From NCBI RefSeq assembly GCF_001194135.2, contig NC_068987.1, positions 48,162,978 to 48,226,624 of the forward strand: a stretch of 63,647 nt of DNA, given 5' to 3'. Made by a program: the position numbers and the translations under genes. The notes under the pieces are model-generated. The model did not search any database and was not told the DNA's origin. It saw only the letters and a list, made by a program, of their open reading frames with translations. Shown in pieces: positions 2,158 to 60,887 of this stretch (its first letter is position 1; every line of letters begins with the position of its first letter). Source of the stretch: Octopus bimaculoides. Lineage: Eukaryota.

Positions 2158-2257
2158 NNNNNNNNNNNNNNNNNNNNNNNNNNNNNNNNNNNNNNNNNNN
2201 NNNNNNNNNNNNNNNNNNNNNNNNNNNNNNNNNNNNNNNNNNNNNNNNNNNNNNNNN
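2158..2257. other. Assembly gap (100 N); other gaps at 26911-27112, 30194-30203, 33992-34240, 35181-35280 (100 N) and 35732-35765
   Basis: Runs of N in the sequence. Confidence 1.
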
Positions 2258-4504: not shown

Positions 4505-4608
4505 CTGTCATTCCTGGGGGGAATTTAGCCGAGATGTGCATGCAGATCAAGCGAGCCATTGATGCCGAACAGAAGAAAGGAATCTATGTTGCTACCAGTG
4601 CTTGTTAA
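4505..4608 (+). CDS. DLG5: DLG5-like terminal coding exon, on the opposite strand from the rest of the gene in this assembly
   Basis: Long polypyrimidine tract plus AG at 4503-4504, then (A)VIPGGNLAEMCMQIKRAIDAEQKKGIYVATSAC-stop. Resembles the recalled DLG5 C-terminus GVIQGGALSSICTQILAMVNQEQNKVLWIPACPL. G + CT restores an Ala codon with exon 36672-36781. Confidence 0.88.
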
Positions 4609-5511
4609 AAAGTTCAACTTCATAAAATTAAATTCCTATTTTTAATTGCTGACCATTCATCTTGCCCCTTATATACTTTTGGATTTACAGGGGATCAAAC
4701 TTCAATATATTATACAACCATCTTCAGCCTTCATTTCAACAAACATTTATCTTAAAACAATTAAAGAAATATCAATGTATTAGGCCTGTGCACATTTTCC
4801 CTCGTCTCCTTCCCATGAATTTGTAATCAGAACATTGTTCACTAATAGATTGTGTATATGTATGTCCCCTTTCAACATTGAAATTTTCGATGCCTTTCAT
4901 TACATTACCAATCTGTCTAAAAGTGAACAAAAGAGAGAATCTGTTTCCATTTTATTCTCCAGTTGCCTTATCAATCAGAATATACAACACACTATGAAAA
5001 GAAACTGTGCAAGAAGGCTTATAGAACTGCTTCTCCCATTTTAAAAATTTTCTTTTCTTTTCTTTTTGGAAGATCAAGGAGTCTGTTTAGAATTTCAAAT
5101 CTGTTAGTATTATTTGCAAGAAGTTTGTAAATAATACATTTTAAAGTTTTTTTTTTGTTTTTTTTTCTTCCACCAAATTTATGATTTTTTTTTTTTTTAC
5201 ACTTTATGATTTCAACCAAAATTTCAACTGTGATAACTTATAAGATTCTTGCACTTAAAATGTGACAACTTTGAAGTATTTCTGGTTGTAATTTAAAATT
5301 CTATTTGTAATCAAAGTTCAGAGGCTGAAATTCTATTCTTTTATCAATATAAATTGTTAAATTTTGATGTCATTTGAAATATTTGCATCTTTATTTTTTT
5401 TTTTAGGAAAAAAGGCAAAAATTTTGTACTCATATTGCTTTTATTGAATAGAATTCCAGCTTCCAATTAAAATGTGGTACGGGTTCTTTATGGTAATTAA
5501 GTATGTGTGTC

Positions 5512-5554
<43 letters not shown>

Positions 5555-7985
5555 GTATGGAGAAATGTATATATAAAAATAGAAAGTGCATTTGCAAGTT
5601 TGAGAAAAACATGCTTAATACAAAACTTTAAGCCAAGACTTCACAGTGAGTTACTTTGTGTTGGTATTCTGTTAAACTTTGACTAGTAGCAACATGAAAC
5701 TTAAAGTAACTTACTATGGAATCTTTGGTTACCAAGATATTTGAAAAGCCCCAGTTGTCCTTGCTGAAATGATTATGCAAATTCAGAATCATGGGAGCAA
5801 ATATTTTACATGTTTATTGCCCTTCTTAATGCCATCCAATCAACAAAGAAATGAAATTTACATATTTTTAGTTATGTTGGCTTAAATAAGAAACATGTCT
5901 TACCTTGTGTTCAATGTTAATGAAGTTTGTACTCACAAAGAATGTTGCCCAAAACTTGAAGCACACAGCTTTTTGAAAAAGGAAAATGAACAACAGAAAG
6001 AATTTTTTTTTTTCATGTGATTGCACCATTTGTTTCACTTTATTTGGTTAGTTTACCAAAATAAAACTTGTCTTTTTTTTTCTTTTTTTTTTTTTCAAGT
6101 AATTGTCAGTTTATTTGCTTTGTGGCCAAAAATACATCAGTAAAATTATTTGACTTTCTCAACTATCAATAGCTAAGCAATATTCCTAGCTTGTTTTCAC
6201 CCTGATTCAGATATAATCTGTAGACCAAGATTGGCATTCTTGATGTTTCATCGTTTAACATTTGCTTTAAAAAAAAAATGAAAAAAAAGGCATGCTTACT
6301 TCTTGTATTTGTTACTTTACAGTTTTTTATGTGTTGATGTTATTTCAAGTTTGCAACTTTCATCTTTGAGTTGATTCTATAAAACTCTGTGTTTTGATTG
6401 TTTTACTTAAAATTGATTGGTGAAATACTTTCATCTGAGAAAATTTTCTATCTGCTCTAACTGATTTCATTAACTAGAATGGTGTTTTGAGGAAATGCTG
6501 GCACATAATTCTTTGAAGTCCAGAAAACTTGCCACATGTTGATGATTAGCAGATGTGAACTGAATGTATTGTAATTAACATCTGGAGAAGAAAGATTTTA
6601 GTCTATCACTAACCAATTGGGTTGAGTTTTGAATGAGGGTGGAATGGTTAATGAAATGCTTTTTAAATATCAAAGTAAAAAATTATTATAAATAAATTAT
6701 ATTTTTGAATAGATATTAAGTGTTATTTGAGAATTTTTTTAAGGTTAAAATTTAGTAGAATTTATTTTACATAAGCATGATATTAGGACATGTTGCCTTT
6801 CTGTCAGAATTTTTCCTTGTGAAGAAAATTTCTGAGTAGTTAATATTCTTTGATTTCACAAGTTTTATTCTTAGTCTGAAAAGCTACTTGAAGTTAACAA
6901 ATCTGTTCAGTTGTTTTTAATGGTCATCTTTATAATACAGTCCCCTGTATTATTGATTTGGATCTTGTCAGTGATTAGTAATGCAAGTTATAAAGAGCAC
7001 TTCAATTGCAGGCCCTTTCCATAATTTTGTAAAAGTCTTTACTTTAAAGAACTATGTTGTGCTGAAAAGTTCCAATAATGAACATTACTTTCCCAAGATA
7101 AAATTCAATATTAGGAGCATTGCAGGCAGTAATACAGTAGAGATTTTACAGTCAGTAGAAGTAGAACTGTGACTAGGATAATGGACTAACAAAATTGCAG
7201 GAGCCTTTTACAAAGTCCTGAACAAGTGGGAAAAATTATCTCAATTTCTAAACATCCATTTTTTGTTAATTCAAATGTTAAATTTACTGTTAAATGAAAA
7301 TATCAAAAAATTTCTTATGCTTAATTTCTTATCTATCAATCAAGCATAAAAAATGAGTATATAGATTTTTTTTTATATATAATTAGAATTGAAGAACTAC
7401 TTAATATTTTTTTTTTTTTTAGATTTAACTTGTTTATCAACATGTGTGCTCATACACACACAACTGGTACTAGTTTTTTTTTTCTTTTGTCTTTAATTGG
7501 ATTGGTCTGGTGGAAGCTGTTGTACCCTTGACATTTGCAGACCCTTTTTATCTTAGCATAATTTATACAAATAGAAATTGTTGTACAGTAATGGCTGATT
7601 TCATAAGACAAGCTGTTAATCCTAGCTAGAAGTATGTCAGATACTTTGTTCCTCCTAATCACACTCATTGAATTGTGAAATATCAAATGTAACCAAGTAA
7701 AATTATCTTATGAGCTGAGAAACATATGCACAGTTTGTTAGTGAATTGCATTAAAAGACTTCTTCATTTTGCTAACTCAACCCACTTTTATAGAACTCTT
7801 CACTTTACTGAATCCACAAGATTAAAGTGTCAAGCTCACTTTCCCTATGGACACTTCATGTATATTTAATGTATAAAGGCATGTTCAATCACTTTGTGGT
7901 TGATCATGGACTTAGACTTATAATGTGGGCAGTCCTCTGTTGATAAAACTTTTTCCAAAATTTGCTTGTTTTATCAAAACTTTCT

Positions 7986-8202
7986 TTAACTCTTTGGCAT
8001 TTAAACCAGCCATATCTGGCCCAGCTATTCCGTTTTATATTCAAACCGACTAGATCTGGCCTCTCACACCTACCCTACATTCTAAAAATAAGCTGTCATA
8101 TCATCAAAATCTTGAAGCTACAGATAATGTATGATTAATTCAAAACAAATATATAAAGAAGCATTACATTTGACAGAATAATCTGAGTGCTAATGGGTTA
8201 AT
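7986..8202. mobile_element. piggyBac-type MITE; second copy at 29139-29362 in opposite orientation
   Basis: TTAA at both ends, CCC/CTC..GGG termini with short TIRs, no ORF. Confidence 0.65.
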
Positions 8203-8239
8203 ACTTTTTTTTTCTGAAAGAGAAGACCATGCCCAAGTC

Positions 8240-8500
8240 TTTGCAAAGCCTCAAAGATTAATAAGATTGATGCTGTTGATCTTCGACTAAACCCTTAGAA
8301 GTTAACATGTGCAGGGAGAGAAATCCAGAGAGTGACACTCTGGGAAAGAAAGGACTGGATATAGTGGTTAGTGAGGAACCTAGTGGGTGGATATTATATG
8401 GGTGAAGAGGTACAGAGAGATAAAGGGTTTGGGTGTGCCTGAGTAGAGGTGTCATAAGACCAGCCATCTCCATGGGGTAGTGGTCCCTGTGGTACTAGTT
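8240..8500 (-). mobile_element. CR1/L2-type LINE 3' fragment
   Basis: TNHYIQSFFPRVS resembles the SFFPRT...WN.LP C-terminal motif. Confidence 0.55.
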
Positions 8501-8729
8501 GAAAAGGCAGTGGAAAATGATCTGTACATCCATGGGCCAGAGATTGGGAGTATTTGTAAGTAATTTTAAAGCATTAACATTTTTGTATTTTTATATTCAG
8601 AGATACACATATATTGCTTGTGTGTGTATGTATACATCTAAGAGCAACCATATAAGGTCGTACTTATATTTTACATATATATTTTATATATATATGCATA
8701 TTTTTATATATATGTATATTTAATATATA

Positions 8730-8784
<55 letters not shown>

Positions 8785-10842
8785 CCTGAGATTTAGGGGA
8801 GAATACAAATAGAATACTAATAGAAATTGAACTTCAGCAACACAAATAAACCTGCTCCAAATGACAGCGAAAGCATATGATTCAGAGACCTGATTCACTC
8901 AGATCATATCTTCCTATTGCTTTTCACATTACTGTGATAAATGTGATAAAGATACTGCATAGTTAAGACTTAAATACTGACTTGGAAATCTGAAAAGTTA
9001 GCAGCCTTTTAATCATTGGGCTGAAGTATTAATTTTAATGATTTAAATGTTTCTCTTATTTTCCTTACTCTTACAATTTGAAACACTATTTGAGTTTCAG
9101 GAAGGTCATAAGGCAAACAGCACTGTTTGTTTCAATACATGATTTCACATCAAGAATCTTGCAAACCAAATGCTAAAACCATTTGAGTCAATTCCTTAAA
9201 AAGTTAAAGAATACTGCTGATAAAAAAAAAAGCAGTTGCAAACAAAAATATTTGGTTCACACAAGTTGAGCTGTTTTGTTGCAACAAATTACCATTGATT
9301 CCTTGAGATTTAGCCCATCTGTCACATTTTCATCCAACCCTTATTTGAAATTCCACTGCTGAAGTATTATTACATTTTTTGCCCTTCAATTTACTCAAAT
9401 ATGTATAACTTTTGAAATATATTTAAGTGGCATAACCAGCCTTACATGTATATTATTACTATGGCACACTGTTGCTGTTTACTTTGAAAGATATGATCAA
9501 GTGGTTTCTCATTGTCCTCTCCAAGTAGTCATGAGAATTGTGGTGGACATTACTCATAGAATGGAAGTGAAATAGCTTCTCTTGACCAGGTTCTAGGTTT
9601 CGTCTGCTGGAGGCATATCTTCAGCACTACAGTACTTACTTTAACTTTTTACCCTTTATAATATAATAGTATTTCTTTTCTGAAGGTATAGGACCTGAAA
9701 TTGATTTTAAAGATATGGAATTAAATGTTTTTGATGCCTTTTCCAAAGAAAGTAATACTGTAAATGAAGTGAAACCATTCTCACAGAAAATTGGATTCAG
9801 AACATGGTTTCAAGAACTTTACTTACAAGTAGTGATTATTATGAAGATGATTGATTTATTAGTAAAGATTCCATTCTTGAAAATTGCTGAAATCTTTTAT
9901 TGTGATAGCTTAATCAGTTTTTTTTTAATGATGTGAGAACGAACCAATATTTTGAAGAAGGTTTGAAAGTAAAACAATACAATAGAATCTGAAGTAACCA
10001 ATGGTGGTCTGCATTGACAAATAGTTAAAGCTAAATGGTTACAAAGTGAGAATAAGTTAGTTGGCTTTGGGGAAGGGACCAGGTTTGACATTTCAGGTAG
10101 GACCTTCAAGTTGAAGATTTGGTTGTGTAATTTATAGGATGTGTAAGGTTAAGCAGTCTCTTTTGCAACAACAAACATCTGCTGTACATTGTTGAAAGTT
10201 ACAAAGCAACTATCGAAGAAGTATCCAGCATGTAATAGTGTATGCACATGTAAGAGGGAGTGATTGATTGTTTTACATGATCAGCAAGGGTTATTATTTC
10301 ATTTAGTGTTTTCTTTTTGCTAAACAAAGATTTTCATAAATTTTCTACTGATGAGAATCAGAAAAATACTGTCTTAAACTGCACTGCATATGCTAAAACA
10401 ATATGCATTATCATTCTGCTTAAAATTCCTTGACTCTGTGTGTGTATTACATGGTCCTAGTACAGGCTGAGCTATAAGACATATAGGCCACCACCCAAAC
10501 CTGCAGATGGTTAACTCAGTGCTAGAGCAGATGTATTTTGTTTTGAGTCTGGCAGCACCACAATATGTTTGGTAAAATAACCTACTTACAAAGTAGGAAG
10601 AGCTTTTGTTTATCATCATTGTTTTAACATCCACTTTTCCATACTTGCATGGGTCAGGCAGAATTCTCTGAAGCAGATTTTCTATGGCCAGATGCTTTCT
10701 TGTCATCAGCCTCCAACTGTTTCCAAGCACAGTTATATTTTGCTTTAACCAGGCATCTTTTGAGGTAAGATTGGAAATAAATGACATCACTTCTATGATG
10801 GTGATACGCATTCACATCTATGACATAATGTATGTGTGTGTG

Positions 10843-10887
<45 letters not shown>

Positions 10888-11702
10888 GATTTCATTAATT
10901 TTCTGCCAAATCCACTCACATGACACTGGTCAACTCAAAGCTGTAGGAGAAGACACTTGCCTTACCTAGAATGCCATACAGTGTGAGTGAATCCTGAAGC
11001 TATATGGCTGGGAAGCAAACTTCTTAACCACACACCTATTCCAGCACCTATTTGTGTGTGTTTGAAACAGGTATAGTTGGGTGTTTAAGATCTTCACTTC
11101 ACAATAAAGTGCTTTCAGATTAATCCTACTGCATGACACCTTGGATTGACCAAAGCTATGTGCATAAAATTTGGTAAATGGAAACTGTGCAAAAACCAGT
11201 CCTGCGTGTGTGATCTCTGTGTGTCATTGACCATATTTAGACATCATTGGCATTTGTTTATACTCCATATAGACACTATACTGCTTCTTTGTGGTTTGAC
11301 ATGGAAAAACTAGTGGAATAAATGATCTTACTTGAAAATAAATAAAGGTCGGTGTCAGAAAAGGAATCTGGCCTTACAGCCTTCCAAAATTTTATCTGAT
11401 CGATGCTAACATGGAAAAAATAGACTTACAAAACAATGATTATATACAGCCACACACATGCACTTAAGCATGTTAATTTAACATTATATTACATAATATA
11501 ATCTAACAGTATATTATATAATATAAATTAACATTATATTATATAATATAATTTAACATTATATTATCTTCATGTTAGAAATATTGCTGTCAACAAAACC
11601 TACTTCCAACCTTAAACTAAAGATACAAAGACACCCTACTCATAATTTTTTTGCTCTTATTTTTATTAGATGAAATCGTAAAATTACAGCCGGAAAAGTT
11701 GA

Positions 11703-11864
11703 GTTTTTTTTGTTATCCCTCTTTCTTCAGAGGAGGATGATCTTCATTCAAGTCCATGTTGGGTTGTTGGTGCACTTGAAGGTGGCTAATGAGTCCAATT
11801 TGGGTTCTTTGTGCACTCGAAGGTGACCAATGAGTCCAATCTGGGCTTTGAAGGATCTTCTGAA
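11703..11864 (-). mobile_element. Short 3' end of an RTE/BovB-like LINE with A-tail
   Basis: Minus frame RSFKAQIGLIGHLRVH (RTE C-terminal His motif), short 3' UTR and A8 tail, flanked by ~100-bp direct repeats. Confidence 0.7.
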
Positions 11865-14800
11865 TCCAACCTTAAACTAGAAATACAAAGATACCATACT
11901 CGTAATTTTTTTTTTTAATATTATTATGATTATTATTAGATGAAACCTTTAAAATTACTGCTGGAAAAGTTGATTGGGTATTGGGCTGTTAATTAATCTT
12001 GAATTACAGTTTCAATCCTTCCAGTGGACTTCCACACAGTTCCTAGTTTCACTAACAAGGCTTGGATCAATCTATACAGTGAGACTGAACCTTGTACCTC
12101 TTGATTGCAAAACAAACTTCTTAACCGTTTAGCCATATTTTACTTGTGCCTAGCTTGCAGTAATAAACTCAAAAATAAGTGCTGACCTTGACCTTGATTC
12201 ATGGCTGAAGCTCTTATGTTGTGACTTTGTCAATGTCATTTCTGTCACTTCCATGGCTCAGTGATTAATTCAATAATTTTATTGATATTGAGTGAGAATA
12301 GACTTTGTATGGTAGAAAAGAGAAAATAACCATCTGTACACTTGTGCCTGTGTTGTAATAAGATAGCAGCAAACAAACAAGGGATGACTTAACATTTTAT
12401 TTGAATCTCTTTAACTAATACAAAAAAAAAAAAATTCAATGCCTCATATCACTTTAAGGTCACTGGGACACTGATAATTTCATTTTCATGCTGTAAATCA
12501 AAGAAAGATATTTTTGAGTAGCCTTTTTTTTTTTACCACTTTCTTTGTCTAGGTTCATTTGAGGATTTTAGCTCAACAAAAGCTGGTGAAACATAATTAG
12601 AATATAACAAAATTTTAGAATATACGACTTTTATATTTAAAAATTATGGAATGTATAACTTTTATATATAAAAATTATATAATATGTAACATTCATATAT
12701 GAAAATTATAGAATGTATATAATAAAACATTCATGGACTGGCCTGCTATTTATAAAGTAATAACTTGTATTCCCTGATATCCAGTTAGGTCTAAATGGAC
12801 AATATTATTGAGAATGAAACATCTTTTTCACTGACTGCAATGCATATAGTAGATTAAAAAATATAAATCTTTCAATTGGTAGACTAGTAAATCCCAATGA
12901 ACGTGTGTGTGTATGTATATATATATATGACATGAGATGTTGAAATTCATGCTGTCATTTTAGAATTGTAACAAACATGAAAGAAAATGCATTAAGTATA
13001 ATATTTAAAGAATAAATGTACTGAAGGAACTTTTATTTTTAGTAATTGTACCCTATCAAATAATCTTCATTTACCCCCAGATCCCTCTTCATCCTTTTTA
13101 ACTACTCAAGCTTTTGTTACAGATGCAGGCATGGCTGTGTAGTCAAGAAGTTCACTTCCTAGCCATACGGTTTCTAGTTCAGTCTCACTGTGCAACACTT
13201 TTGGCAAGTGTCTTCTACTATGGCCCTTCTGTGTAGATTTGGAAGAGGGAAACTGAAAGAAGACTACCACATATATGTGTGTGTTTGTGTTTATGATGTA
13301 TGAAAGTTGCAAAATACAGGCAATGTTGTTGATGTCAGTTCTTTTGTCAACAAATTCACTTCCTTTTTGCCTTTGAAACCAGGTCAGATCACTTGTAAAA
13401 CAGGTAAGTAGCAAGCAGAAGGGCATTCAACTGTAAAATGGAGCCTCAATATCATACTCATCTAACCCATGCAAGCATGAAAAAAAAGAAAGGCATAAAA
13501 TGAACAATAGTATTATTTATTTTTTATGAATTTTAGTACTTTCTATTATTTGAATAATACATCCAAATGTTTCTTGCTGTTTGTAGTACATCTTACAGTG
13601 TATATTACCAAAAATATAGGTGTAGGTACAACTTCTCTTTCCTAGAACCTTTCCTTCCAGAACCATTCAGGATTACAGATTTTTACATATCACACTCTAA
13701 ATTAAGTAAATATTAAATTTGCTTAATTAAATTAAATACAAGCACCTGTACATTAGTATAAACGATACTAATTTATACTGTACTAGGCAAGATTCCTGCT
13801 AACTAGTCTGGCAGCTGCAGGAAGTTGAAGTTCCTGCTGATAAATTAGGACTACAAGAGGTTGCAGACCATCAGTGCCTAGAAAGTTGGTGTTGTATATT
13901 TTGTATTATTAAATTGTATATAATAGAGGTAAATATTAACCAATATCATTACTTTCCCTATAATTGATTAATGAGCATTAACTAATGTTCACTACTTTTC
14001 CTATAACTCTTTGTTCCAAGATATTTGAATTGTTTTTTTTTTCTGGTTTTTTTTTTTACCTTTATTTATTCACCACTCACCTCAGTCAGGTCTCAGCTCC
14101 TTTTGTTTCTTTTCATTTTGTATCAATTTTGAGGTATTTCGTTAGGAGCTGGCTACTGAGTACTGAGATTACTTCTCACCTGGGTTTAACATCAATTAAC
14201 TCATTACTTGCATAACTTTTGATATATAGATAATTAGTACAACGAAATTGTACAGTATAATTCACATTGTACAATTTTTTGTAACTGTTCTGTTTTTCAG
14301 TTCTGGGGAGGATACATTGTTGGTTGATGAGTTACATCTGTATACATGATCATATGCATCAGTATAAACTTACCATGTTTGTGTTTTGGTTTCACATTGT
14401 TACAGTTGTCCCCTTGTCAATGTTAGTCTCCACTTAAAATATTTATTCTGGATATTGAAGAACACATTTTTTGCTCTTGATTAGACATTCTTTTTTTATC
14501 AATTTACCTCTGAAAAAGAGGTAAATTTTCAAGTTTTTTATTACTTGCTTCAATATTTTTTTACACATTTCAGAATTTTATTTGTTCAATGTTTTCAGTT
14601 TATATTCTGATTTGCTGATTTCAATTTTTTTTTTTTTTTTTTTAAATTTCATGTTTAGAAACAGCTCTAATTGTCAAGTTTCTCAATTGGAAAACACTAT
14701 TATTTTGATCAAGTGATCAGATATTTGGGTCACAATGTTTAATTGATAGATTTAAGAAAATCAAACGATTCTGTTAAATAAAGTAGAATTATTAGTAATA

Positions 14801-15960
14801 TTAGTAGATTGTTAACTTATCTAGCAAACCTTAGCATTTAAAAATTTTTTCCTGATTATCTTCATACAGGTTTGCATTAGCTAGCAACTCTAGAATGTGT
14901 CTCTGGTACAACCACCCTTTTAGATGTGAGCTATATTTTAATGCAAGTTTAGTAGTTGTTGAGGTTTGAAATATATTGAGATATATTCTGACAAAGAAAT
15001 TTGAACATTTAATATTTAGTCTGTCTGTGTGTAGATTGTAGGGTCTCTTTGAGAAGTTATCTGATGTGCTTTAGCATCATTGTGCATTCATTAAACATTC
15101 AGGTACATTCATATTAAACTTGCTTCTTAGGCCACTATATCTATTCTCACTTTTCCACTTAGTCTCTAGATGCATTCTTTGATATATTCTATGTTAAGCA
15201 TTTGTTTTCTATAATTAAATGTCATTTATATACTTTAAGCGTATTGGCTACTTCAAATGAAAATACAACTGTCTTATCTTCTCAATAAATGTATTTCCTG
15301 GGTTACATGCATAACTATGTGATTAAGAAGTTTGCTTCACAACCACATAGTTCCAGATTCAATTTCACTATGCATCATCTTGGGCAAATGTCTTCTAACA
15401 TAACCTCGGACTGGTCATTGCCTTCTAAATGAAATTTAATTGGTGGAAACCATATGAGAGCCCGTCATTTATATACAAACGGCTATGTGTGTGTATATGT
15501 ATATTTATGACTATGTCTGTTTTTATTGTTAACCAATGTCAAGTTACACCCTTTTATGATTGTTGAAGATCAATAAAATAAGTAATTGGGTTGATATGCT
15601 CAACAAAAATGCCTTGAGGGTTTCTATAAATATTGGATTGCATGGCTGCAGTCCAGTGATTGAAGCCAGCAGCCATAGTAGAATACATTCTTATATTACT
15701 GTCAGTATTAGTTCCATTTATGTTTTCCTTTAAAATATGTTTGTGCAGTATGATTTCTTAATGAAAGAGATTACAGCAGCCAATAATGTTAAATGGGAAA
15801 ACGTTTCAGTAGCCAATCAATCAAGGTCACAGATTCAGAATATTGTGTGTCTTAGATAATGCAGTAGAAGCTGAGCTGCTTTAAAATCCCCCACAGTGTA
15901 AGAATTTTCAGAACCTATGGTAACATGATAAGATATGTGTGTGAGTGTGTATGTAATATA

Positions 15961-16054
<94 letters not shown>

Positions 16055-17789: not shown

Positions 17790-17993
17790 TTAATCCTTTT
17801 GAAACCAGCCCACCTAAGACTGAAACTACTACGATACAAATTCTCTATTTTAAAGTAATCTAAATGAAGACCTTTTTGCAAAATGTTGTTCCAGACATAA
17901 ATAACAATGACAAAGTTACTTCAATAAATTTTTCATTATTTTCAAAATTAATTGAAATGAAGGCAGTATTCAACAGAAATACAAAAGGGTTAA
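17790..17993. mobile_element. Second TTAA MITE family; other copies at about 41181-41397 and 50635-50858, fragments near 39565, 55100 and 57150
   Basis: ttaa-tcctttt...aaaaggg-ttaa termini and shared internal ctgttgaaatacactgcc motif. Confidence 0.6.
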
Positions 17994-18783: not shown

Positions 18784-19032
18784 CAAATGATGTCAAGGCA
18801 AGGGTACACACACACCCACACACTTCAAGAAGCAGCAGGTTCAAGACAGCCTCTTCTTCGGTGTGTTGTGACAAACGTGTTTGAGAACAATCTTAGGATA
18901 GTAGTTCTTTCTGGCAGAGCTTGGGTAGAAGGCTTGTGTGGATACAACTGTTAAGTTTTGCTGGTTCCAGTGACCTTATGTTTGGAGGGATTGTTGCCAA
19001 TTGCATCTCAAGGTAAAAGCAACCTTTATTTG
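18784..19032 (+). repeat. Exact 249-bp duplicate of 16934-17182
   Basis: No mismatch seen by eye at offset 1850. Preceded by a 25-bp partial copy at 18760-18784. Confidence 0.95.
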
Positions 19033-26100: not shown

Positions 26101-26539
26101 ATTTGACAATTAATTTTTTTTCTCTCACTACACACCTTTTATTTTGCAAGAACTTTAGTCTGTCTGTTATAGATATTTTTTAGTTTATTAACCCCTTTCA
26201 GTATCAACCTCTGATCACAATGTTGACTGCATAAATCATTTGTCTTGACTTTACAGGAATTTTTCATTTTCCACATTTCAATAATAGTAATAATCACAAG
26301 GCCTGAAATTTTGGGGGGCAAGAAGTCAACTACATCAACTCCAGTACTCAAATGATACTTGTTTCATTGACCCCCAACAGAATGAAAAGCAAAGTCAACC
26401 TCAGCAGAATTTGAACTCAGAACATAAAGCCAGAAGATATGCCACTTAGCATTTTTCCAATATGCTAATGATTCTGTCAATGTGTTTCCGTAATAATGAT
26501 AATTATAAAAATTCTTTCTAATTTTAGCACAAATGCTAC

Positions 26540-26571
<32 letters not shown>

Positions 26572-26574
26572 ATG

Positions 26575-26910
26575 ATGATCATCATCATCATCATCGTTTA
26601 ACGTCCGCTTTCCATGCTAGCATGGGTTGGACGATTTGACTGAGGACTGGTGAAACCGGATGGCAACACCAGGCTCCAATCTAATTTGGCACAGTTTCTA
26701 CAGCTGGATGCCCTTCCTAACGCCAACCACTCAGAGAGTGTAGTGGGTGCTTTTACGTGTCACCCGCACGAAGGCCAATCAGGTGGTACTGGCAACGGCC
26801 ACGCTCAAAATGGTATCTTTTATGTGCCACCCGCACAAGAGCCAGTCCAGGGGCACTGGCAACGATCTCGCTCGAAAATCCTATGAAGGCCAGTCAGGCG
26901 GCAACGCCCA
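26575..26910 (-). mobile_element. Non-autonomous retroposon family C with (GAT)n tail; also 2316-2584+, 35281-35905+, 45505-45830-, 47790-47918+, 49460-49650+, 51655-51990-
   Basis: Shared end ...ccatgctagcatggaaagcggacgttaaa(cgat)(gat)n and core cagctggatgcccttcctaacgccaaccac. Confidence 0.75.
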
Positions 26911-28262
26911 NNNNNNNNNNNNNNNNNNNNNNNNNNNNNNNNNNNNNNNNNNNNNNNNNNNNNNNNNNNNNNNNNNNNNNNNNNNNNNNNNNNNNNNNNN
27001 NNNNNNNNNNNNNNNNNNNNNNNNNNNNNNNNNNNNNNNNNNNNNNNNNNNNNNNNNNNNNNNNNNNNNNNNNNNNNNNNNNNNNNNNNNNNNNNNNNNN
27101 NNNNNNNNNNNNTAATGATTTCAAATTTTGGAACAATTTTGAGGCACTTTCTTTTAACCTTGAAAGGAAGAAAGGGAAAGTTAAAATCAGTAGGATTTGA
27201 ACTCAGAATGTAAAGAGCCAGAAGAAATGCCATAATGATTCTACCTCACCACTCTAAAGAATGGTAATAATAATAACTAGCAGGACCCATGGAAATTCCA
27301 TGGTATAAGTCAGCAATTTGAAAACATTATGTCATTAAACACAAGCAAGGAATTGCTAAAAATTCTTTTGATGTCCTGCCATTTAATAAGGCAAGATATA
27401 TACCTCCTTGTAATACATTTGACAGATATGATGTGCTTTATAGTTTAAAGAAATAAAAGACAAATTAAAAAGATAAAACTTATATATATTGATTAAATGT
27501 TTATTATTTACAATTTTGTCAAATGTGTGTCCCTATACCTTATTTATTATCAGAGACTAGGACAGCCCTACAGGGAACTGAACTCATTCCAAAATGAAAT
27601 GGTTGGAGTCATTTGGAGCCAGCTTCATGCAAGGTATTAGGAAGCATGTTCCTTCTAGTGCACATGTTGTTGAACGTACATGTTGAACGTACATGTAGGA
27701 CATTATTTTTTGAAAAATAATCCTTTTCATTCTTTCTCTTTTTAGCTAATGTTGTCTATCGTTGTTCATATTTTACGAACAAATGTTTTGATTGAGCAGA
27801 TGATAATTAATTGCATTACAGCAAACACGTTGAAGGTAATTTAAAAAATAAAAATATGTAAAAAAGTACACTGTTCACTGTCCAACCACCAACAAGGCTC
27901 AGTTTGAGTTCTTTACTAATAGACAATATTTTCATTTCACTTCGCTTCAGCGATCTATCTGTTTGTGTATCTATTAATAAATCTTTCTATTTGCATAATT
28001 TTTTAATGTATTAGCAGGCTCACCTACCTACGTACCTGCCTGTCTGTCTAAGTAACTATCATATCTACTTTCCCTTTTGCTGATGAGTGTATCTATTCAC
28101 TTTCATAATACCAATAAGCATTTAAACCTCACAAAAAAAAAAAAAAAATTGAAAAACAAGATTGCCTCAACATGGCCATAGCGTTTGGTCTGAACATGTA
28201 AAAGATAAAAATGTAACTTTCACAGCTATTTGCTAAGTTTATTTCACATTAATTTAACTAGG

Positions 28263-28645
28263 TACAGGCGTGGTTGTGTGGTAAGAAGCTTGCTTCCCAA
28301 CTGCTTTGTTTCAAGTTCAGTCCCACTATGTAACACCTTCAGCAAGTGTCTTCTACTATAGCCTCAGATTGATCAAAGCTTTGTGAGTGGATTTGGTAGA
28401 TGGAAACTGAAAGAAGCCCATGTATATATCTATGTGTGTGTCTTTCTGTCTGTGTTTGTCTCCCATCACTACTTGACAACCAGTGTTGGTGTGTTTGCAT
28501 CCCCATAACTTAGCAGTTCAACAATAGAATAAGTACCAGGCTTTAAAAAAGTGCTGGGTTTGAATCATTTGACTAAAATTCTTCAAGGTTGTACCCCAGC
28601 ATGGCTGCAGTCTAATGACTAAAACAAGTAAAAGATAAAAGATAT
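28263..28645 (+). mobile_element. tRNA-derived SINE family A; also about 10620-11050-, 13100-13290-, 15290-15500+, 16720-17345-, 19600-19975-, 36835-36965+, 60308-60700+, 60970-61330+, 61860-62230+
   Basis: A-box-like (tgtgtggtaag) and B-box-like (gttcagtccc) head plus a shared body repeated at least 10 times. Confidence 0.8.
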
Positions 28646-31019
28646 CTATCAATGTATCTTTTAAAGCATAAATTTATAGATCTTCATGACATTGCTCAGT
28701 TATGTAGTGCTCCAGCATGGCCAGTCAAAATGACTGAAACAAGTAAAAGAATAAAAGAATTTCAGTCTGTCTCTCTTTCTCTTTCTCTTTCTCTCTTTCG
28801 TATTTAATACTGATTCAACTATTCCCTTTTCATTCTTGTTTCTGTCATTCTTTCTTTTCTCCCCATTCTCTCTCTCTGTTTCTTCATTCAAGTTATAATT
28901 TCTTATGATGGTGTAAGCATAATACACAGAAATGACAGGAACAAGCAGAATGATATAATGATTTCAAATTTTAGCACAAGGCCAGCAGTTTTAGGATAAG
29001 TCGATTAGATCCACTCCAGTACTTGACTAGCACTTGTTATTGATCACAAAAGAAAGAGAAGTTGATCTCAGTGACATGAAGAACTGAAAGAAATACAGCT
29101 AGTCTCTAACATGCTAACAATTCTACCAGCTTGATGCTTTAACCCTTTAGCATTCAGATTATTTCTGTCAAATGCTTGTCTATTCACATTGTTTTGAATT
29201 AATCAGCTATTATTTGTAGCTAAGAGATTTTGATGATGTGATTGTTTTATTTGTAGAATGACATTGTAGGGTAAATGTGAAAGATCAAATCCGTCCTATT
29301 TGAACACAAAACAGGGAGAATATTTTGGCCAGATATTGCTGGTTTAAATGCTAAAGGATTAATAATAAATTTTTCTATTTGCACAAAGCCTAAAATTTTG
29401 GGAGAAGGGGCTCTTCAGTTACATTGATCTTAGTCATGTACTTTCATTATTTAGGACTAAGTGGTTAGGGTATTTGGTTCACAATTTTAAGGTTGTGAGT
29501 TCAATTCCTGGTAACACATTGTCTCTTTGAGCAAGACATTTTATTTTTAGGTTGCTCCAGTCCACTCAGTTGGGAAATGTATTGGTAATTCAAAAGGCCA
29601 TCCTTGTCACATTCTGTGTCACACTCAATCTCCCTGAGAACTATGTTAAGTGTACACGTGTCTGTGGAGTGCTCAGCCACTTGCACATTCATTTCCCAAG
29701 CAGGCTGTTCCATTGATCAGATCAACTGAAACATTTATTGTCATAACCGACAATGTGCCATTAGTGCTCAACTAGTACTTATCTTATTGACCTTGAAAGG
29801 ATAAAAGGCAAAGCTGACCTTGGTAACTCTTGAACTCAGAATGTAAAAAGCTGAAAGAAATGCAGCTAAGCATTTTATCCAATGCACTAATAATCATGCT
29901 AGCTTGCCTTCTTAATAACAATAATAGTTCTTTCTACTATAGGCACGAGGCCTGAAATTTTGAGAAAGGGAATAGTCAATTACATTGACCTCAGTTCTTG
30001 ACTGGTACTTACGTTGATGTAATTTGAACTTGGGACATATCGAGAAGAAATGCTACTAAGAATTTTGTATAATGTGCTAACAATTCTGCTAGCTCACCAA
30101 AATAATTTTTTCTAACATAGGCACATGGTCTGGGATTTTGAGAGAAGAGTGAGATGATTACACTGACTCCGGTGCTCAACTGGAACTTATATTNNNNNNN
30201 NNNACACACAAAAAAAAAATGTTGAAAGGCAACCTTGGTGGAACTTGAATTCAGAAATTAAAAGGCTGGTAGAAAGGCAACTAAGCATTTTCTGCAACAT
30301 GCTAATGATTATGCCAATTTGCCACCTTACTACTACTAATAATAATCCTTTCTACTAGAATTTTGCCTGGTGTAGTAACGATTCTGCCAGCTCACTGCCT
30401 TAATAATAATAAGTTCTTTCAAATTTTAGCACAAGGCCAGTAATTTTAGGAATGGGATAAGCTAATTTCATCAGCCTTGGTACTTGACTGGTACTATTTT
30501 AGCAATCCTAAAAGGATAAAATGCAAAGTCAACAGGATTTGAACTCAGAACATAAAGGGCAAGAAGAAATGCAACTAAGTATTTTGTCCGATACATTAAC
30601 GATTCTGCCAACTCACTGCATTAATAATAATAAAAATGATGACGATGATGATGATGAATAAGATATAATATTACTTGTTTCATTCTTTCATGTTATTGTA
30701 TCTTTAACATTTATGAATTTGTGCCATTCACTATAACTTCTGTAACATTTACAAAATAGACATAAAATTAATTCCTCCTTTATCTCTTTGTCTTTCACAT
30801 GTTGTCTCATGTGATTTGTTTAGTGATAAGATTAATTCACTTTTTTATTTTATGTCTGAAGTATTTGCTTTTTGGGTTCTTTCATTTTTTTATTTTACAA
30901 TTCTTATTAAAAGGATATCCTGTTGGGAAAGGAGGGCAGAAACAGAAGAGTGTCAAATTAAATGCCTTGCAGTATATCTGTTTGATAATAGCCAATACAA
31001 ATGTTGGCAAAAGTACACT

Positions 31020-31960
31020 TCCAAAGTTACCCATTGTATGACGGATAATACTCTAGTATAGTTTATATTCTGAATTGAAATCCTGCCAGTGATAACCTAG
31101 CCGCCATGCTTTTATTCAAAAATAATAACTAGGCATATAGTGTAACTAAATCAGTCAACATCACTACTTTCCTGCAAATGAATGACAAAAGTGAATGTAA
31201 AGAATCAGCCTTTGAGCAGTGCAACAGTGCTAATATTAATACTATTATTAAGTATCACTATAGAGTACCATAGAAGGGAGACAAGCACAGGAGTTAAATA
31301 ATGCCACCAGACACCAGTCAGTTTTTCCACCCAAAACTCAAAAAATAAGGAAAGAACAAGCTATAAAGTCTCCAGTAGTTACAATGAAACCAAGAGCATA
31401 AATAGGCACAGTGTAAATACCACCAACAGCAAATATATGGAAAATTCCAATGCTAAGGACATGAATTACAGTAGTAATCGATTTAACAACAACCAGTTAG
31501 GGCCAAATAATAAAAGAGAAAATGACAGAACAAAAACCAAAAATAGGAGGAAAAAAGAGGATAACAAGCATAACGATGCACCAAACAATAAACGTACATG
31601 TAGGGACTAAACACAATGTCCTTTGCAGAACCTATGTATGTGTCGGAATGTGATATGCAAAGTGAACACAAGAAGCCCATACGTCTATATAGGAGCATCA
31701 GCTGATTTCAAAAAATTAATATCAAAATCACATTGCCAGTTTCAATGGGGTTGATAAGAGGTATTCAACATCCTCAGCTGACCTTATGTGGAAATTAAAA
31801 GAGGACGGGATAAAATATACCTTGAATTGGTCAATAATAAAGTATGCACATCTATATGATGCCCTCTCTTGAAAGTGCAGGTTATGTTCAGAGGAACCAC
31901 TATGCATATTGTTGAGTGATGAAGGGGTTATTAACAAATTTTCAGAAAGAATAATAAGAT
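31020..31960 (+). mobile_element. Penelope-like element, degraded GIY-YIG endonuclease end
   Basis: CPLQNLCMCRNVI..VYIGAS..., then MWKLKEDGIKYTLNWSIIKYA...CRLCSEE...VINK, read across frameshifts. Confidence 0.75.
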
Positions 31961-32439
31961 GCAGACACAAGCTGAAATCACATTTTCACAATATAATAGA
32001 GGTAATTAAGTAATTAATTAAGGATTATGTAGAATAATAGTCAGCTAACCAAATCTCTCCTCTAGTGGAAATACACCAGTATAAATGTTATATGTACTGT
32101 GTATTTACTTTCAGAACCTAATGTGTTGTATGAAGTTGATATTGTAGCTAATTGTATGCAAATTTATATGTATTTAAGCATGTCACCATATACTATTTAG
32201 TAAACGATGAACAGGTGATCAGTGGATGCTCCACAAGACAGAATGTACACAAAATTAGACTGAAGTTTGTATATTTTTCACAATAGAGGTTATTAACTGT
32301 TTAGTCAATGAATGCATATATATTGACCATGTACTTATTGTTTGAGCTTAATGTTACTATATTATTGAAACTGTATCTCACTGTATGCAAACTCCCATGT
32401 ATCTGTGCATACAACTACACACAACAACTGATAGGCTAC

Positions 32440-33020
32440 CAGTTGTTTGAATGAATATGTGTGTATGTTGATATGCAATATATAGCCATGGGTGGATGAA
32501 CATATATATTTGTATGTGTAACTAAAATATTCATATAAATGCATACTGATGTGTATAATATGTGTATGAGTGCGTATACTTATGAGTGTATATGTGAGTG
32601 TATGCCTGTGTGTCTATATGTGTGTGTGTGTCTGCATGGATGACTGTGAGTGCCTGCATGTGTGTGTCTGTATGAACATATATATAAACAGAGTTTGTGT
32701 GTATACATGTATATCTGTTGATGTAGGCATGCATATGTGTGTCCATGTATGTGTGTCTATGTGCATACACACACACAAAGACATATATATAGGGGATGCA
32801 TATTTGTTTATGTATGTGAATATATGAAAATGAGTGCAGGCATCTATTTATATGTGAATGATGCTTGTGTGTCTGTGCATGAGTGTCCACATGTGGGTTG
32901 GTGGTTCTGAGCGATGGGGAGTGGATATGGAATCATCTGTCTGCATGGTTGCTTGTGTTTGTAAAGATGGATGCAGGAGTCCTTCAGCCTGTATGTGTGC
33001 ATGCCAACCAATGTGTATGC

Positions 33021-33108
<88 letters not shown>

Positions 33109-33130
33109 ATGCATGTGTATGATTTGGTAT
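32440..33130. repeat. Degenerate TG/CA-rich low-complexity tract ending in a perfect (TG)n of about 80 bp
   Basis: Directly visible. Other (TA)n/(TG)n tracts lie at about 2258-2315, 2585-2771, 5515-5548, 8730-8781, 15945-16051, 60830-60885 and 63490-63647. Confidence 0.9.
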
Positions 33131-34261
33131 CTGTGGATTTATGGGCCGGTTGATGTTTGATCATAAATCAACCCAATTGACTAGATAGTGGTCGCAAGCT
33201 GAGAGCATCTGCTGCCTGGACAGAGTGAGTGTTTGAATGCAGGAATTCGCTGGTCGATGGTGTCTCTGTCTGCTGGAGGTAAGGAAGGGTGAATATGTTT
33301 TTGTATGTGTATGTATGGGCGTGTGTATGTATATTTATATATATTTTTACCTCATAAAATACAATAGTTGCCTAAGGTCAATTTGGATGCCAATTGTGCC
33401 TTTTTTTTTATCTCAAACATAGCTGATTTATTATTTTATGATTTTATTTAATGTATCTCTTTATCAGTGTAAAGCATAGTATTTGATTCACTGGTTTATT
33501 GCATATTTATTTTATATATGATTCTTTGTAAGTAGGTTTATGACCGATATGAGAACTGTTCTTCATTCTAAATCATGCCTTCTTCTGCATGCCAATAGCT
33601 ACAGGTAAATACCAAAATGTATTCTAATCTAAATAAGCAAAACGAAGATTACAGAATGAAGCACCTTTTGACAAGTCACCCAATAAGGCACATCTGCATA
33701 CATCTGCACCAGATGATGAACCACGACTATTTGTACAGAATTTTGACTGATGCTTGATAAGTTGAACTAACTGTCGTGATTAATGAACAACCTTGTAAAT
33801 TCCATTTTATTTCTCTTTCTCTCATATGTTAGAAATTCAACAGACATGAAGAAATTTCTGCAGTAAATCCAGTGGCACATATATCCATACTGTTGAGAAC
33901 ATGAGGTAGCTGAATGTTGAGTGAATGTCTTCAAATAGCATACTAAGAGGTGTATATCCATATATATATAAATGTATATATATATATATATNNNNNNNNN
34001 NNNNNNNNNNNNNNNNNNNNNNNNNNNNNNNNNNNNNNNNNNNNNNNNNNNNNNNNNNNNNNNNNNNNNNNNNNNNNNNNNNNNNNNNNNNNNNNNNNNN
34101 NNNNNNNNNNNNNNNNNNNNNNNNNNNNNNNNNNNNNNNNNNNNNNNNNNNNNNNNNNNNNNNNNNNNNNNNNNNNNNNNNNNNNNNNNNNNNNNNNNNN
34201 NNNNNNNNNNNNNNNNNNNNNNNNNNNNNNNNNNNNNNNNTAAATTTAAATTTTTTAAAAG

Positions 34262-35180
34262 GTTTAATAAAAAATAACAACTAATTAATCAATAATGTAT
34301 TCACCCTTGTTGTTTACAACTTCTTCCCAACGTTCAACAAGACTTTCAATACCTTGTTGGTAGAAATCACCTGATTTCGACTCGAAAAATTGATCCAACC
34401 AAGCTCTCAATTCTGCATCAGTATTGAACGAAACTCCATGCATAGCATTTGAAAAAGATTGAATGCGGTGGAAATCCATTGGTACCAAATCAGGAGAGTA
34501 CGGCAGGTGTGGCAGCACTTCCCAGCCATGCACTTGAATGACTTCTTTGGTCATATTGGCGATATGAGGGCAGGTGTTGTCGTGCAGCAGAAGAACTCCA
34601 TGCTGATGATTAGGTCTTTTCTCTTGAATAGCCATGTTGATTCATTCCATCTGTTGAACATAGAGTTCCACGTTGACCATTTAGTTCCGTTCAAGCTGTT
34701 CGTAATGGATAATCCCTTCCTGGTCCCACCATATGCACAACATCGTTTTACACAGATGAAGATCTTGTTTCATGTGCAGTGTTGCTTGTTTACCAGGGCT
34801 AAGCCATTCCTTACACAGCTTCATATTGATGAACAGGTACCATTTTTCATTGCCAGTAATGGTTCAGTAAAGAAATCGTTGCATGTGTCCATGAGTTGAG
34901 CAGTAACGAGCAAGCAAACCAGTGAAGATTGTGGCTCGTTGATTTTTGTTGTTGTCACTTAAAGCATGCAGAACCCATGCTCCATACTTCTGAACCTTTC
35001 CCATCGAGTGAAGTTGCTTCTCTATAGCAGTGTGGAAGCATTCCATTTTCTCTGCCGGTTTCCTTGTTGTTTGACAAGAATTTTCATGCAAAAGTTGATT
35101 TAATCACTCTTCATCGAACTCAACTGGACAGCCAGAACAAGGTGCGTCTTTGAGGTCAAAGTTTCCATTTTTGAACTTGG
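34262..35180 (-). mobile_element. Mariner (D,D34D) relic truncated at a gap
   Basis: WVLHAL, HDN-x34-D with HLPYSPDL. First catalytic Asp reads Asn (TGNEKW) and the frame is broken. Confidence 0.9.
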
Positions 35181-35902
35181 NNNNNNNNNNNNNNNNNNNN
35201 NNNNNNNNNNNNNNNNNNNNNNNNNNNNNNNNNNNNNNNNNNNNNNNNNNNNNNNNNNNNNNNNNNNNNNNNNNNNNNNNGACCTGTTGAGGCAAGTGAA
35301 TTTGGAATTTGGAATTTGGAATTTGAAATCGAAATCGAACCGAATCCGATGACTGGCACCCATGTCAACCACTCCTTTATTGGACACTAAACTCTGCTTG
35401 CGAAGACCTGTTGGGGCAAGTGAAATCGTAATTGAACCATACTCGATGACTGGTCACCACGCCAGTGGAGCACTAACAGCACTGTCGAGCGTGTTCATTG
35501 CCAGAGCAGCTGTCTGGCTTCCCTGCTAGTGGCCCGTAAATAGCACCATTAGAGCGTAATCGTTACCAGCATTGCCTTCTAGCACTTGTGCTGGTGGCAC
35601 GTTAGAAAATCATTCAAGCGAGGTTGTTGCCAGTGCCACTGGACTGGCTCCCGTGCAGGTGGCATGTAAAAAATCTCCTTTTTGAGCATGGCCGTTGCTA
35701 TTACCGTGTGACTGGCCCTTGTGTCAGTGGCNNNNNNNNNNNNNNNNNNNNNNNNNNNNNNNNNNGGGTATCCAGCTGTAGAAACTCTGCCAGATCAGAT
35801 TGGAGCCTGGTGCAGCCTTCTGGCTTGCCAGTTCTCAGTCAAATCGTCTAACCCATGCTAGCATGGAAAACGGACGTTAAATGATGATGATGATGATGAT
35901 GA

Positions 35903-35943
<41 letters not shown>

Positions 35944-36671
35944 TGACATGCACACAACCATGCTGGCACATGTTTATTTTTAGAAAATATCTTCCCTCTC
36001 ATAATAATCATTTCTACTATAGGTACAAGGCCTGAAATTTTGGGGAAGAGGATAGTCAATCATATCGACCCAGTACACAACTGGTACTTTATTGACTGTG
36101 AAAGGATGAAAGTCAAAGTTGACCCCAGCAGCAGTGATTTCGTCATTGTCTCCCTGCCAATGATAGCAAGAATAATAGTATAACAATCACCACAACAAAA
36201 TAGAGTTTCTTACATGTTGTTTGCTTTATATCAAGTTCTTTATAAAAACAAATTAGTATCAAACTGAAAGATTATTCAATACCTTTTGTAGAATGAATGT
36301 AGAGTCTGATGAAGGAGCAAGCCAATCTTTTCCTTGTAAAAGTTTAATACACACACACACTTAAATATATATATATCATACACAGATACATATGACTATA
36401 TGTATGTGTTTCCATCAATTTGTCCCATAATTAGTGGTTCAACCAATAAGTATGAGACTGCATGAAGTAAGTATAGGGAATAATATAACCAACTAAACTT
36501 TTACGGGCAATATGGCTACAGTCAAATAATTGAAACTATTATAATACTGTTGTAAGATAATATGAGATATACAACTATATCTACAATGTTTGTTTTTTTT
36601 AAACAGATTTTCAAATCATATATGGGAGACAGAAAAGGAATTATTTTAAAGATGTAATGATGAAGTCTTAC

Positions 36672-36781
36672 CTGTTATAAGATGCCGGTAATCATGTTCT
36701 ATTTTTTGGAATTGTTCAAAACGTTCTTTTGAATTTTTGCTACTAATTTTTTCTGTCCAAAACTGGACATCTCGAACTTCT
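36672..36781 (-). CDS. DLG5: DLG5-like penultimate exon, GK domain
   Basis: AG/GT bounded, 110 nt, EVRDVQFWTEKISSKNSKERFEQFQKIEHDYRHLIT. Ends with G (phase 1). Confidence 0.92.

Positions 36782-58683: not shown

Positions 58684-58737
<54 letters not shown>

Positions 58738-60826: not shown

Positions 60827-60887
<61 letters not shown>

What the first reader, a model, noticed from the sequence alone, without database searches (positions are those of the whole stretch)
4505..36781. DLG5 terminal exon is antisense to the other 11 exons
Seen: exons 61753-36672 splice in phase on the minus strand, but the only exon that completes the GK domain and supplies the stop (G+CT=Ala, AVIPGG...SAC*) is on the plus strand at 4505-4608. 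Gaps lie on both sides. Two are exactly 100 N (2158-2257, 35181-35280), a length often used for unsized joins. Flipping 2258-35180 puts the exon near 32933 on minus, giving a 3.7-kb last intron like the other introns (0.1-4.7 kb). Flipping only 2258-26910 gives about 12 kb, and that contig has oppositely oriented family-C repeats at its two ends. Inference: scaffold mis-orientation is most likely. A repeat-mediated inversion allele, or opposite-strand trans-splicing as known for Drosophila mod(mdg4), are the interesting alternatives.
Basis: partly seen in the sequence, partly recalled or inferred. Interest (0 to 1): 0.8.

Follow-up and report, generated by a model that had tools for sequence, protein, structure and literature searches.

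The report
Mis-oriented scaffold block splits DLG5
The last exon of a DLG5-like gene does sit on the opposite strand from its other 11 exons, but it lies in a 33-kb block joined to its neighbours only by two unsized 100-N gaps, so this is almost certainly a scaffold placed backwards and not biology.

Summary
Eleven minus-strand exons (61753-36672) have AG/GT splice sites and chain in phase. They encode part of one PDZ domain, a complete PDZ, an SH3 and most of a guanylate-kinase (GK) domain. The only sequence that completes the GK domain and supplies the stop is exon 4505-4608 on the plus strand. It enters in phase 1 (G|CT = Ala), and the CDS totals 1602 nt (533 aa + TAA).

In the limpet Lottia gigantea the orthologous gene has the same exon boundaries and the same phase-1 last intron, about 1.1 kb long. 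All its exons lie on one strand.

The discordant exon lies in block 2258-35180. Exactly 100 N bounds this block on each side, the usual length for a join of unknown size. The gaps inside the block have estimated sizes (202, 10 and 249 N). Reversing the block gives a 3738-bp last intron, within the range of the other ten (119-4660 bp).

No sequence from the same species could be reached, so the orientation is inferred and not shown directly.

Verdict: scaffold mis-orientation (about 0.85; any assembly error about 0.93). A real inversion allele is about 0.04 and opposite-strand trans-splicing about 0.01. Interest is low.

The parts
36672..61753 (-). Eleven exons of the 3' half of a DLG5-like MAGUK gene (end of one PDZ, linker, a full PDZ, SH3, HOOK, most of GK). 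Exons: 61753-61651, 60209-60056, 57663-57474, 55638-55536, 55416-55173, 53995-53784, 50498-50457, 48463-48362, 44753-44626, 41551-41442, 36781-36672. The gene continues upstream beyond the right end of the window.
   Evidence: Splice sites and phases. Homology to Lottia P0001. tblastx collinearity with the Lottia locus. Pfam PDZ, SH3_2 and Guanylate_kin.
4505..4608 (+). Terminal coding exon (104 nt, enters in phase 1, 34 codons plus TAA). It encodes the last helix of the GK domain and the C-terminus, and lies on the strand opposite to the rest of the gene.
   Evidence: Sequence. tblastn E 2.8e-6. Phase and CDS length. The PSD-95 GK alignment runs to model residue 520, inside this exon. The Pfam GK match also runs to residue 520.
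2158..2257 (.). Gap of exactly 100 N: the left boundary of the discordant block and probably a join of unknown size.
   Evidence: The 100-N convention for unsized joins is described in PMC9694125 and PMC7055283.
35181..35280 (.). Gap of exactly 100 N: the right boundary of the discordant block. It lies inside what would be the last intron.
2258..35180 (.). The 32.9-kb block that is most likely reversed. It consists of four contigs joined by gaps with estimated sizes (202, 10 and 249 N). Apart from the terminal exon it holds only transposon fragments and simple repeats.
   Evidence: No other conserved coding sequence was found against the Lottia locus.
2318..2585 (+). SINE-like 'family-C' repeat with a (GAT)n tail, near the left end of the block.
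26582..26910 (-). Family-C repeat in the opposite orientation, running into the 202-N gap. It is 93% identical to 2318-2585 over 269 bp.
35560..35900 (+). Another family-C copy. It continues collinearly across the 34-N gap (35732-35765), which shows that this sized gap is a sound join.
34241..35180 (-). Decayed mariner transposase fragment that forms the right end of the block. It is cut by both neighbouring gaps, and neither terminal inverted repeat is present in the window.
   Evidence: (PF01359).

Best explanation
This is an assembly artefact. Block 2258-35180 was an earlier small scaffold whose internal gaps were sized from read pairs. A later scaffolding step then placed it between its neighbours in the wrong orientation, marking each join with the conventional 100 N for unknown length.

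In the real chromosome the block is reversed. The terminal exon then lies about 3.7 kb downstream of exon 11 on the same (minus) strand, and the gene is spliced in cis like its orthologue.

Shown: the exon structure, the phases, the gap layout, the effect of flipping the block, and the cis arrangement in Lottia. Inferred: that the 100-N gaps are joins without firm orientation evidence, and that the true orientation is the reverse of the one assembled.
For: 1. The discordant exon is separated from the rest of the gene by a 100-N gap, and its block ends at another 100-N gap. All gaps inside the block have other, estimated sizes.
2. 100 N is the usual way to write an inter-scaffold gap of unknown size.
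3. One reversal restores all 12 exons to one strand in the right order. The last intron becomes 3738 bp, against 119-4660 bp for the other ten.
4. The Lottia orthologue has the same exon boundaries. Its last intron falls at the same codon position in phase 1 (TCA T|gt...ag|GT GTT), is about 1.1 kb long, and lies on one strand with the rest of the gene.
5. The exon keeps its acceptor, its reading frame, its stop and 62% identity to Lottia. Without it the protein would end ...HLITGKTSSLHL and lack the last GK helix. The exon is therefore still under selection and must be joined to exon 11.
6. Proximity-ligation scaffolders infer orientation from read density only and have a raised rate of orientation errors (PMC4772016). 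A benchmark reports 4.3% local orientation errors, worse for short pieces, and notes that these harm gene prediction (PMC7672694).
Against: There is no direct evidence of the true orientation. No read, transcript or second assembly of this species was reachable.

The one internal test I could devise, a transposon split across a 100-N gap, was uninformative.

I do not know which assembler or scaffolder produced the window. That the 100-N gaps are weakly supported joins therefore rests on convention.
Confidence: 0.85

Rival explanations
1. It is an assembly error, but not the simple flip. Only contig 2258-26910 may be reversed (last intron about 12 kb). Alternatively, a larger unit reaching beyond the left end of the window is reversed, or the block is also misplaced.
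For: Flipping 2258-26910 also restores collinearity (12008-bp intron, from the coordinates). Contig ends lie in repeats, where assemblers go wrong. The left limit of the mis-oriented unit cannot be fixed from inside the window.
Against: It would need an orientation error at a sized gap (26911-27112), which normally rests on read pairs with known relative strands. The 12-kb intron would be 2.6 times the largest other intron. The whole-block flip needs errors only at the two unsized joins.
Confidence: 0.08
2. A real inversion in the sequenced individual or lineage has turned the terminal exon around. It might have arisen by recombination between inverted repeats. The result would be a truncated allele, comparable in outcome to the intron-22 inversion of the human F8 gene.
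For: Inverted SINE copies at 2318-2585 and 26582-26850 (93% over 269 bp) bracket the exon. Repeats at inversion breakpoints would also cause assembly gaps.
Against: The SINE family is common, with at least five copies in 64 kb, so an inverted pair is expected by chance. A repeat of 269 bp at 93% identity is a poor recombination substrate.

For the whole block, the repeats at the two ends are not an inverted pair. 2318-2585 (+) and 35560-35900 (+) are direct, and the right end of the block is a mariner fragment.

The exon is intact and conserved, so any inversion would have to be very recent. It would also have to break exactly at scaffolding joins.
Confidence: 0.04
3. The true minus-strand terminal exon is hidden in a gap downstream of exon 11, and the plus-strand exon is an inverted duplicate.
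For: The unsized gap at 35181-35280 lies 1.4 kb downstream of exon 11 and could hide a 104-nt exon.
Against: There is no trace of a second copy. The plus-strand copy has a perfect acceptor, the right phase and a stop. This reading needs both a duplication and a loss of sequence in a gap.
Confidence: 0.02
4. The orientation is real, and the mRNA is completed by trans-splicing of two transcripts made from opposite strands, as in Drosophila mod(mdg4) and lola.
For: Only that the sequence as given has a good donor at 36672 and a good acceptor at 4505 on opposite strands, in matching phase.
Against: The antisense layout depends entirely on two unsized joins. In Lottia the homologous intron is an ordinary cis intron. 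There is a single constitutive terminal exon that completes a folded domain, not a series of alternative 3' cassettes.

From my own knowledge, and not tested here, trans-splicing between exons on opposite strands is documented only for a few insect loci.
Confidence: 0.01

Closest known systems
Orientation errors of short pieces in scaffolds built from proximity-ligation data (Chicago/Hi-C; HiRise, 3D-DNA, SALSA)
   Same: A block of tens of kb is bounded by joins of unknown size and reversed relative to its neighbours, breaking a gene model. The error type and its effect on gene prediction are described in PMC4772016 and PMC7672694.
   Different: I have not shown which scaffolder made this assembly or what evidence lay behind the two joins.
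Drosophila mod(mdg4) / lola trans-splicing of 3' exons encoded on the opposite strand
   Same: As the sequence stands, a donor and an acceptor of one reading frame lie on opposite strands.
   Different: Those loci have many alternative 3' cassettes in finished, contiguous DNA, and the arrangement is conserved among relatives (my own knowledge). Here there is one constitutive exon, gaps at both block boundaries, and a cis arrangement in the nearest available relative.
Inversions by recombination between inverted repeats that detach terminal exons (e.g. human F8 intron-22 inversion)
   Same: An inversion would separate the last exon from the rest of the gene, and inverted SINE copies bracket the exon.
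   Different: From my own knowledge, the F8 repeats are about 9.5 kb and nearly identical. Here the repeats are 269 bp at 93% identity and belong to a common family. No second arrangement has been observed.
DLG5 / MAGUK scaffold proteins
   Same: The domain order is PDZ, SH3, HOOK and GK. The closest solved relatives are PSD-95, DLG1 and ZO-1 SH3-GK modules, and a human DLG5 PDZ domain also matches (1uit, E 1.6e-11). The exon structure is shared with the Lottia orthologue.
   Different: Only the C-terminal 533 residues lie in the window. The N-terminal parts that separate DLG5 from other MAGUKs were not seen.

Membership tests
Scaffold mis-orientation artefact | The discordant segment is bounded on both sides by scaffolding joins (gaps) | tested here: met
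   100-N gaps at 2158-2257 and 35181-35280 bound the block that holds the exon.
Scaffold mis-orientation artefact | The bounding joins are of the unsized kind and differ from the sized gaps inside the segment | tested here: met
   Both bounding gaps are exactly 100 N. The internal gaps are 202, 10 and 249 N. The 100-N convention is described. The actual evidence behind the joins (the AGP file) was not available.
Scaffold mis-orientation artefact | Reversing the segment restores gene collinearity with plausible spacing | tested here: met
   The last intron becomes 3738 bp, against 119-4660 bp for the others.
Scaffold mis-orientation artefact | Independent data (long reads, maps, a second assembly) show the reverse orientation | not testable with these tools
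   No same-species sequence was found in any reachable collection.
mod(mdg4)-type opposite-strand trans-splicing | The antisense arrangement lies in verified contiguous DNA | tested here: not met
   Two unsized gaps separate the exon's block from the rest.
mod(mdg4)-type opposite-strand trans-splicing | There is a series of alternative 3' exons or cassettes | tested here: not met
   There is one terminal exon only, and it completes the GK fold.
mod(mdg4)-type opposite-strand trans-splicing | The arrangement is conserved in relatives | tested here: not met
   The Lottia orthologue has all exons on one strand, with the same phase-1 intron. Only one distant relative was available.
mod(mdg4)-type opposite-strand trans-splicing | Mature mRNA joins the two exons while the DNA is antisense | not testable with these tools
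   No RNA data for this species could be reached.
Repeat-mediated inversion allele | Long, highly similar inverted repeats at both breakpoints | tested here: inconclusive
   Sub-block 2258-26910 has an inverted SINE pair (269 bp, 93%). The ends of the whole block do not form an inverted pair.
Repeat-mediated inversion allele | Both arrangements are observed in the population or individual | not testable with these tools
   No reads were available.
DLG5 (MAGUK) | C-terminal PDZ-SH3-GK module | tested here: met
   Pfam PDZ (3.9e-10), SH3_2 (2.6e-4, just under its cut-off) and Guanylate_kin (1.1e-9).
DLG5 (MAGUK) | N-terminal CARD, coiled-coil and four PDZ domains | not testable with these tools
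   The gene runs off the right end of the window. Only the end of one PDZ and one full PDZ are present.

The most novel reading that the evidence does not exclude
The assembled orientation is correct, and this mollusc-like animal completes a constitutive MAGUK mRNA by trans-splicing a terminal exon transcribed from the opposite strand. That would be the first case of mod(mdg4)-type trans-splicing outside insects, and for an exon that finishes a folded domain.
Probability: 0.01. Interest if true: 0.85.

Novelty: not a real feature. Interest (0 to 1): 0.08.

Why it matters
If the arrangement were real, it would be either a rare opposite-strand trans-splicing system or a natural truncating inversion in a conserved polarity-scaffold gene. 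As an artefact, its value is practical. It flags a mis-oriented 33-kb block that will truncate the annotated gene, which loses its last GK helix and reads through to ...GKTSSLHL*. The block can be corrected by reversing 2258-35180. Conserved genes that break strand exactly at 100-N joins are a cheap check for orientation errors in such assemblies.

Tried and rejected
1. Split-transposon test of orientation. The right end of the block (34241-35180) is a mariner copy cut at 35180. I guessed that the last bases of contig 1-2157 ('TA CAGGTAAA') were its missing terminal repeat, which would have supported the flip. A scan of metagenome contigs found a 95.7%-identical fragment of the same mariner family (L026, JAAUYL010024169.1). 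Its 3' end reads ...CGGCGGGAACTTAGTTGCCAACCCAATA, so the true terminal repeat is TTGGGTTGGCAACTAAGTTCCCGCCG. The guess is refuted, and the true repeat occurs nowhere in the window. The test says nothing either way.

2. Same-species evidence. Two searches of the large protein collection, one with the MAGUK and one with an intronic reverse transcriptase, gave best identities of 48% and 69%. Two exact-product look-ups found nothing. No transcript or second assembly could be reached.

3. Synteny beyond the gene. tblastx of the Lottia locus with 10-kb flanks against the window found only the gene's own exons. There is no neighbouring gene that spans a join.

4. Second copy of the terminal exon, or other inverted pseudo-exons: none found.

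5. Rfam and tRNA scans of the window found nothing.

6. Identifying the species or assembly from literature or accession searches: no result.
Full report
**What is in the sequence**

The window is AT-rich (about 34% G+C) and rich in repeats. It has six runs of N: 2158-2257 (100), 26911-27112 (202), 30194-30203 (10), 33992-34240 (249), 35181-35280 (100) and 35732-35765 (34).

A search of the large protein collection with the candidate exons returned three relatives. The best was a partial Lottia gigantea protein with a guanylate-kinase domain (P0001). tblastn of these proteins against the window places the SH3, HOOK and GK segments in order on the minus strand between 55243 and 36682. The last 29-30 residues fall on the plus strand at 4504-4593 (E 2.8e-6 with P0001, 3.3e-4 with P0003). 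There is no other copy on either strand.

**Gene model**

Reading the splice sites directly and chaining them gives 11 minus-strand exons:
- 61753-61651
- 60209-60056
- 57663-57474
- 55638-55536
- 55416-55173
- 53995-53784
- 50498-50457
- 48463-48362
- 44753-44626
- 41551-41442
- 36781-36672

Each is preceded by a pyrimidine-rich tract and AG and followed by GT, and the phases are consistent throughout. Exon 11 ends with one spare base (G). The plus-strand exon 4505-4608 follows ...ctgtttttag and begins CT, giving GCT = Ala. It continues VIPGGNLAEMCMQIKRAIDAEQKKGIYVATSAC and stops at TAA.

The joined CDS is 1602 nt (533 codons plus stop). Introns are 119-4660 bp. Without the plus-strand exon, the frame reads through the donor into ...HLITGKTSSLHL and stops.

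Pfam finds PDZ, SH3_2 (just under its cut-off) and Guanylate_kin. The GK match runs to residue 520, inside the plus-strand exon. The best solved relatives are the SH3-GK modules of PSD-95, ZO-1 and DLG1. The PSD-95 alignment covers the residues of the plus-strand exon, which form the end of the GK fold.

The name DLG5 fits the domain order and the relatives. A human DLG5 PDZ structure is among the hits. The N-terminal features that define DLG5 would lie beyond the right end of the window and were not seen.

**Comparison with a relative**

The genomic locus of the Lottia protein (L001) shows the same exons in the same order, all on one strand. This includes the 42-nt micro-exon (window 50498-50457).

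The last intron interrupts the homologous codon in the same phase. Lottia has ...TTT TCA T|gtatgt ... tttgtag|GT GTT ATA CAA. The window has ...ATA ACA G|gtaaga ... tttttag|CT GTC ATT CCT. In Lottia this intron is about 1.1 kb.

The intron is therefore old and ordinary, and the plus-strand exon is the true orthologous terminal exon.

**Where the break falls**

The exon lies in block 2258-35180. Both ends of this block are gaps of exactly 100 N, while all gaps inside it have other, estimated sizes.

100 N is the usual way to write a join of unknown length between scaffolds, including when Hi-C joins are prepared for submission to NCBI (PMC9694125, PMC7055283).

A sized gap that I could check, the 34-N gap at 35732-35765, is crossed collinearly by one SINE copy, so joins of that kind look sound.

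Reversing the block moves the exon to 32830-32933 on the minus strand. The last intron becomes 3738 bp (2247 bp of the block, the 100-N gap, and 1391 bp up to exon 11). Reversing only 2258-26910 gives 12008 bp and needs an error at a sized gap.

**Prior rates**

Scaffolders that use proximity ligation must infer orientation from read density. The authors of one such scaffolder, HiRise, report a raised rate of orientation errors (PMC4772016). A benchmark of 3D-DNA found 4.3% local orientation errors, more for short pieces, and noted the harm to gene prediction (PMC7672694).

A 33-kb piece is short by these standards. By contrast, trans-splicing of exons on opposite strands is known to me only from a few insect loci (my own knowledge, not tested here). 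A recent inversion that truncates a conserved gene, with breakpoints exactly at two scaffolding joins, would be an unlikely coincidence.

**The alternatives**

The family has at least five copies in the window. The two copies have different flanks, and the right-hand one simply runs into a gap. Contigs that end in repeats are normal for short-read assemblies.

The ends of the whole block do not form an inverted pair. The left end is a microsatellite plus a SINE on the plus strand. The right end is a mariner fragment, and the nearest SINE outside the block is also on the plus strand.

For trans-splicing there is no positive evidence beyond the layout itself. There is only one terminal exon, not a set of cassettes. 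It completes a folded domain, and the relative splices it in cis.

**What I could not do**

No sequence of this species is present in the collections I could search. Protein searches gave best identities of 48% for the MAGUK and 69% for an intronic reverse transcriptase. Two exact-product look-ups found nothing.

An internal orientation test using the mariner copy cut at 35180 failed. I first thought the end of contig 1-2157 (TA CAGGTAAA) might be its terminal repeat. A 95.7%-identical fragment of the same family found in a public contig (L026) shows that the terminal repeat is TTGGGTTGGCAACTAAGTTCCCGCCG. That sequence is absent from the window.

The true orientation therefore remains an inference.

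**Verdict**

- Block 2258-35180 was inserted backwards: about 0.85.
- Some other assembly error: about 0.08.
- A real inversion allele: about 0.04.
- A hidden second exon: about 0.02.
- Opposite-strand trans-splicing: about 0.01.

Scientific interest is low. The practical value is a specific correction to the assembly and to the gene model.

Noticed in passing
window 16934-17182 and 18784-19032: A 249-bp direct repeat that is 100% identical, with sharply different flanks, 1.85 kb apart. Other repeats in the window are 73-93% identical. This could be a very recent duplication or a local assembly or gap-filling artefact.
   Followed up: partly
L026 (JAAUYL010024169.1) 521-635 versus window 34354-34241: A 1-kb contig in the metagenome collection carries the 3' end of the same mariner family at 95.7% DNA identity, including its terminal inverted repeat. 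Its organism is unknown (an accession search in the paper library found nothing). The contig is either from a close relative of the window's species or a sign of horizontal spread of this mariner.
   Followed up: partly
window 45982-47855 (-): A decayed non-LTR retrotransposon (reverse transcriptase, PF00078) lies in the sense orientation inside the intron between exons 48463-48362 and 44753-44626. Its relatives, at 46-69% identity, are very numerous in marine-invertebrate and environmental assemblies and also carry a PHD finger domain.
   Followed up: partly
window 38784-39122 (+), 40581-40931 (+), 22156-23238 (-), 62293-63440 (+): Further DNA-transposon remnants. One is piggyBac-like (PF13843) and three are mariner-like (PF01359). 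Two lie in introns of the gene. The copies at about 22.1-23.2 kb and 62.3-63.4 kb are 78% identical to each other in inverted orientation.
   Followed up: partly
window 50457-50498 (-): A 42-nt micro-exon (DGYFCGFTKVEKNE) between the HOOK and GK exons is conserved in position and sequence with Lottia (DSIFGYTKIEKQE). Automatic gene prediction could easily miss it.
   Followed up: yes
window 61753 and upstream: The first exon in the window starts in phase 0 behind an AG acceptor, in the middle of a PDZ domain. The gene's 5' half therefore lies beyond the right end of the window. The 1.9 kb to the right holds only repeats and a mariner copy.
   Followed up: no
window 35281-35560: The contig to the right of the second 100-N gap starts inside a repeat unit (GACCTGTTGAGGCAAGTGAA) that recurs at 35404. 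This join also falls in repeated sequence, as do most contig ends here: microsatellites at 2258-2317 and 33960-33991, and a SINE at 26582-26910.
   Followed up: partly
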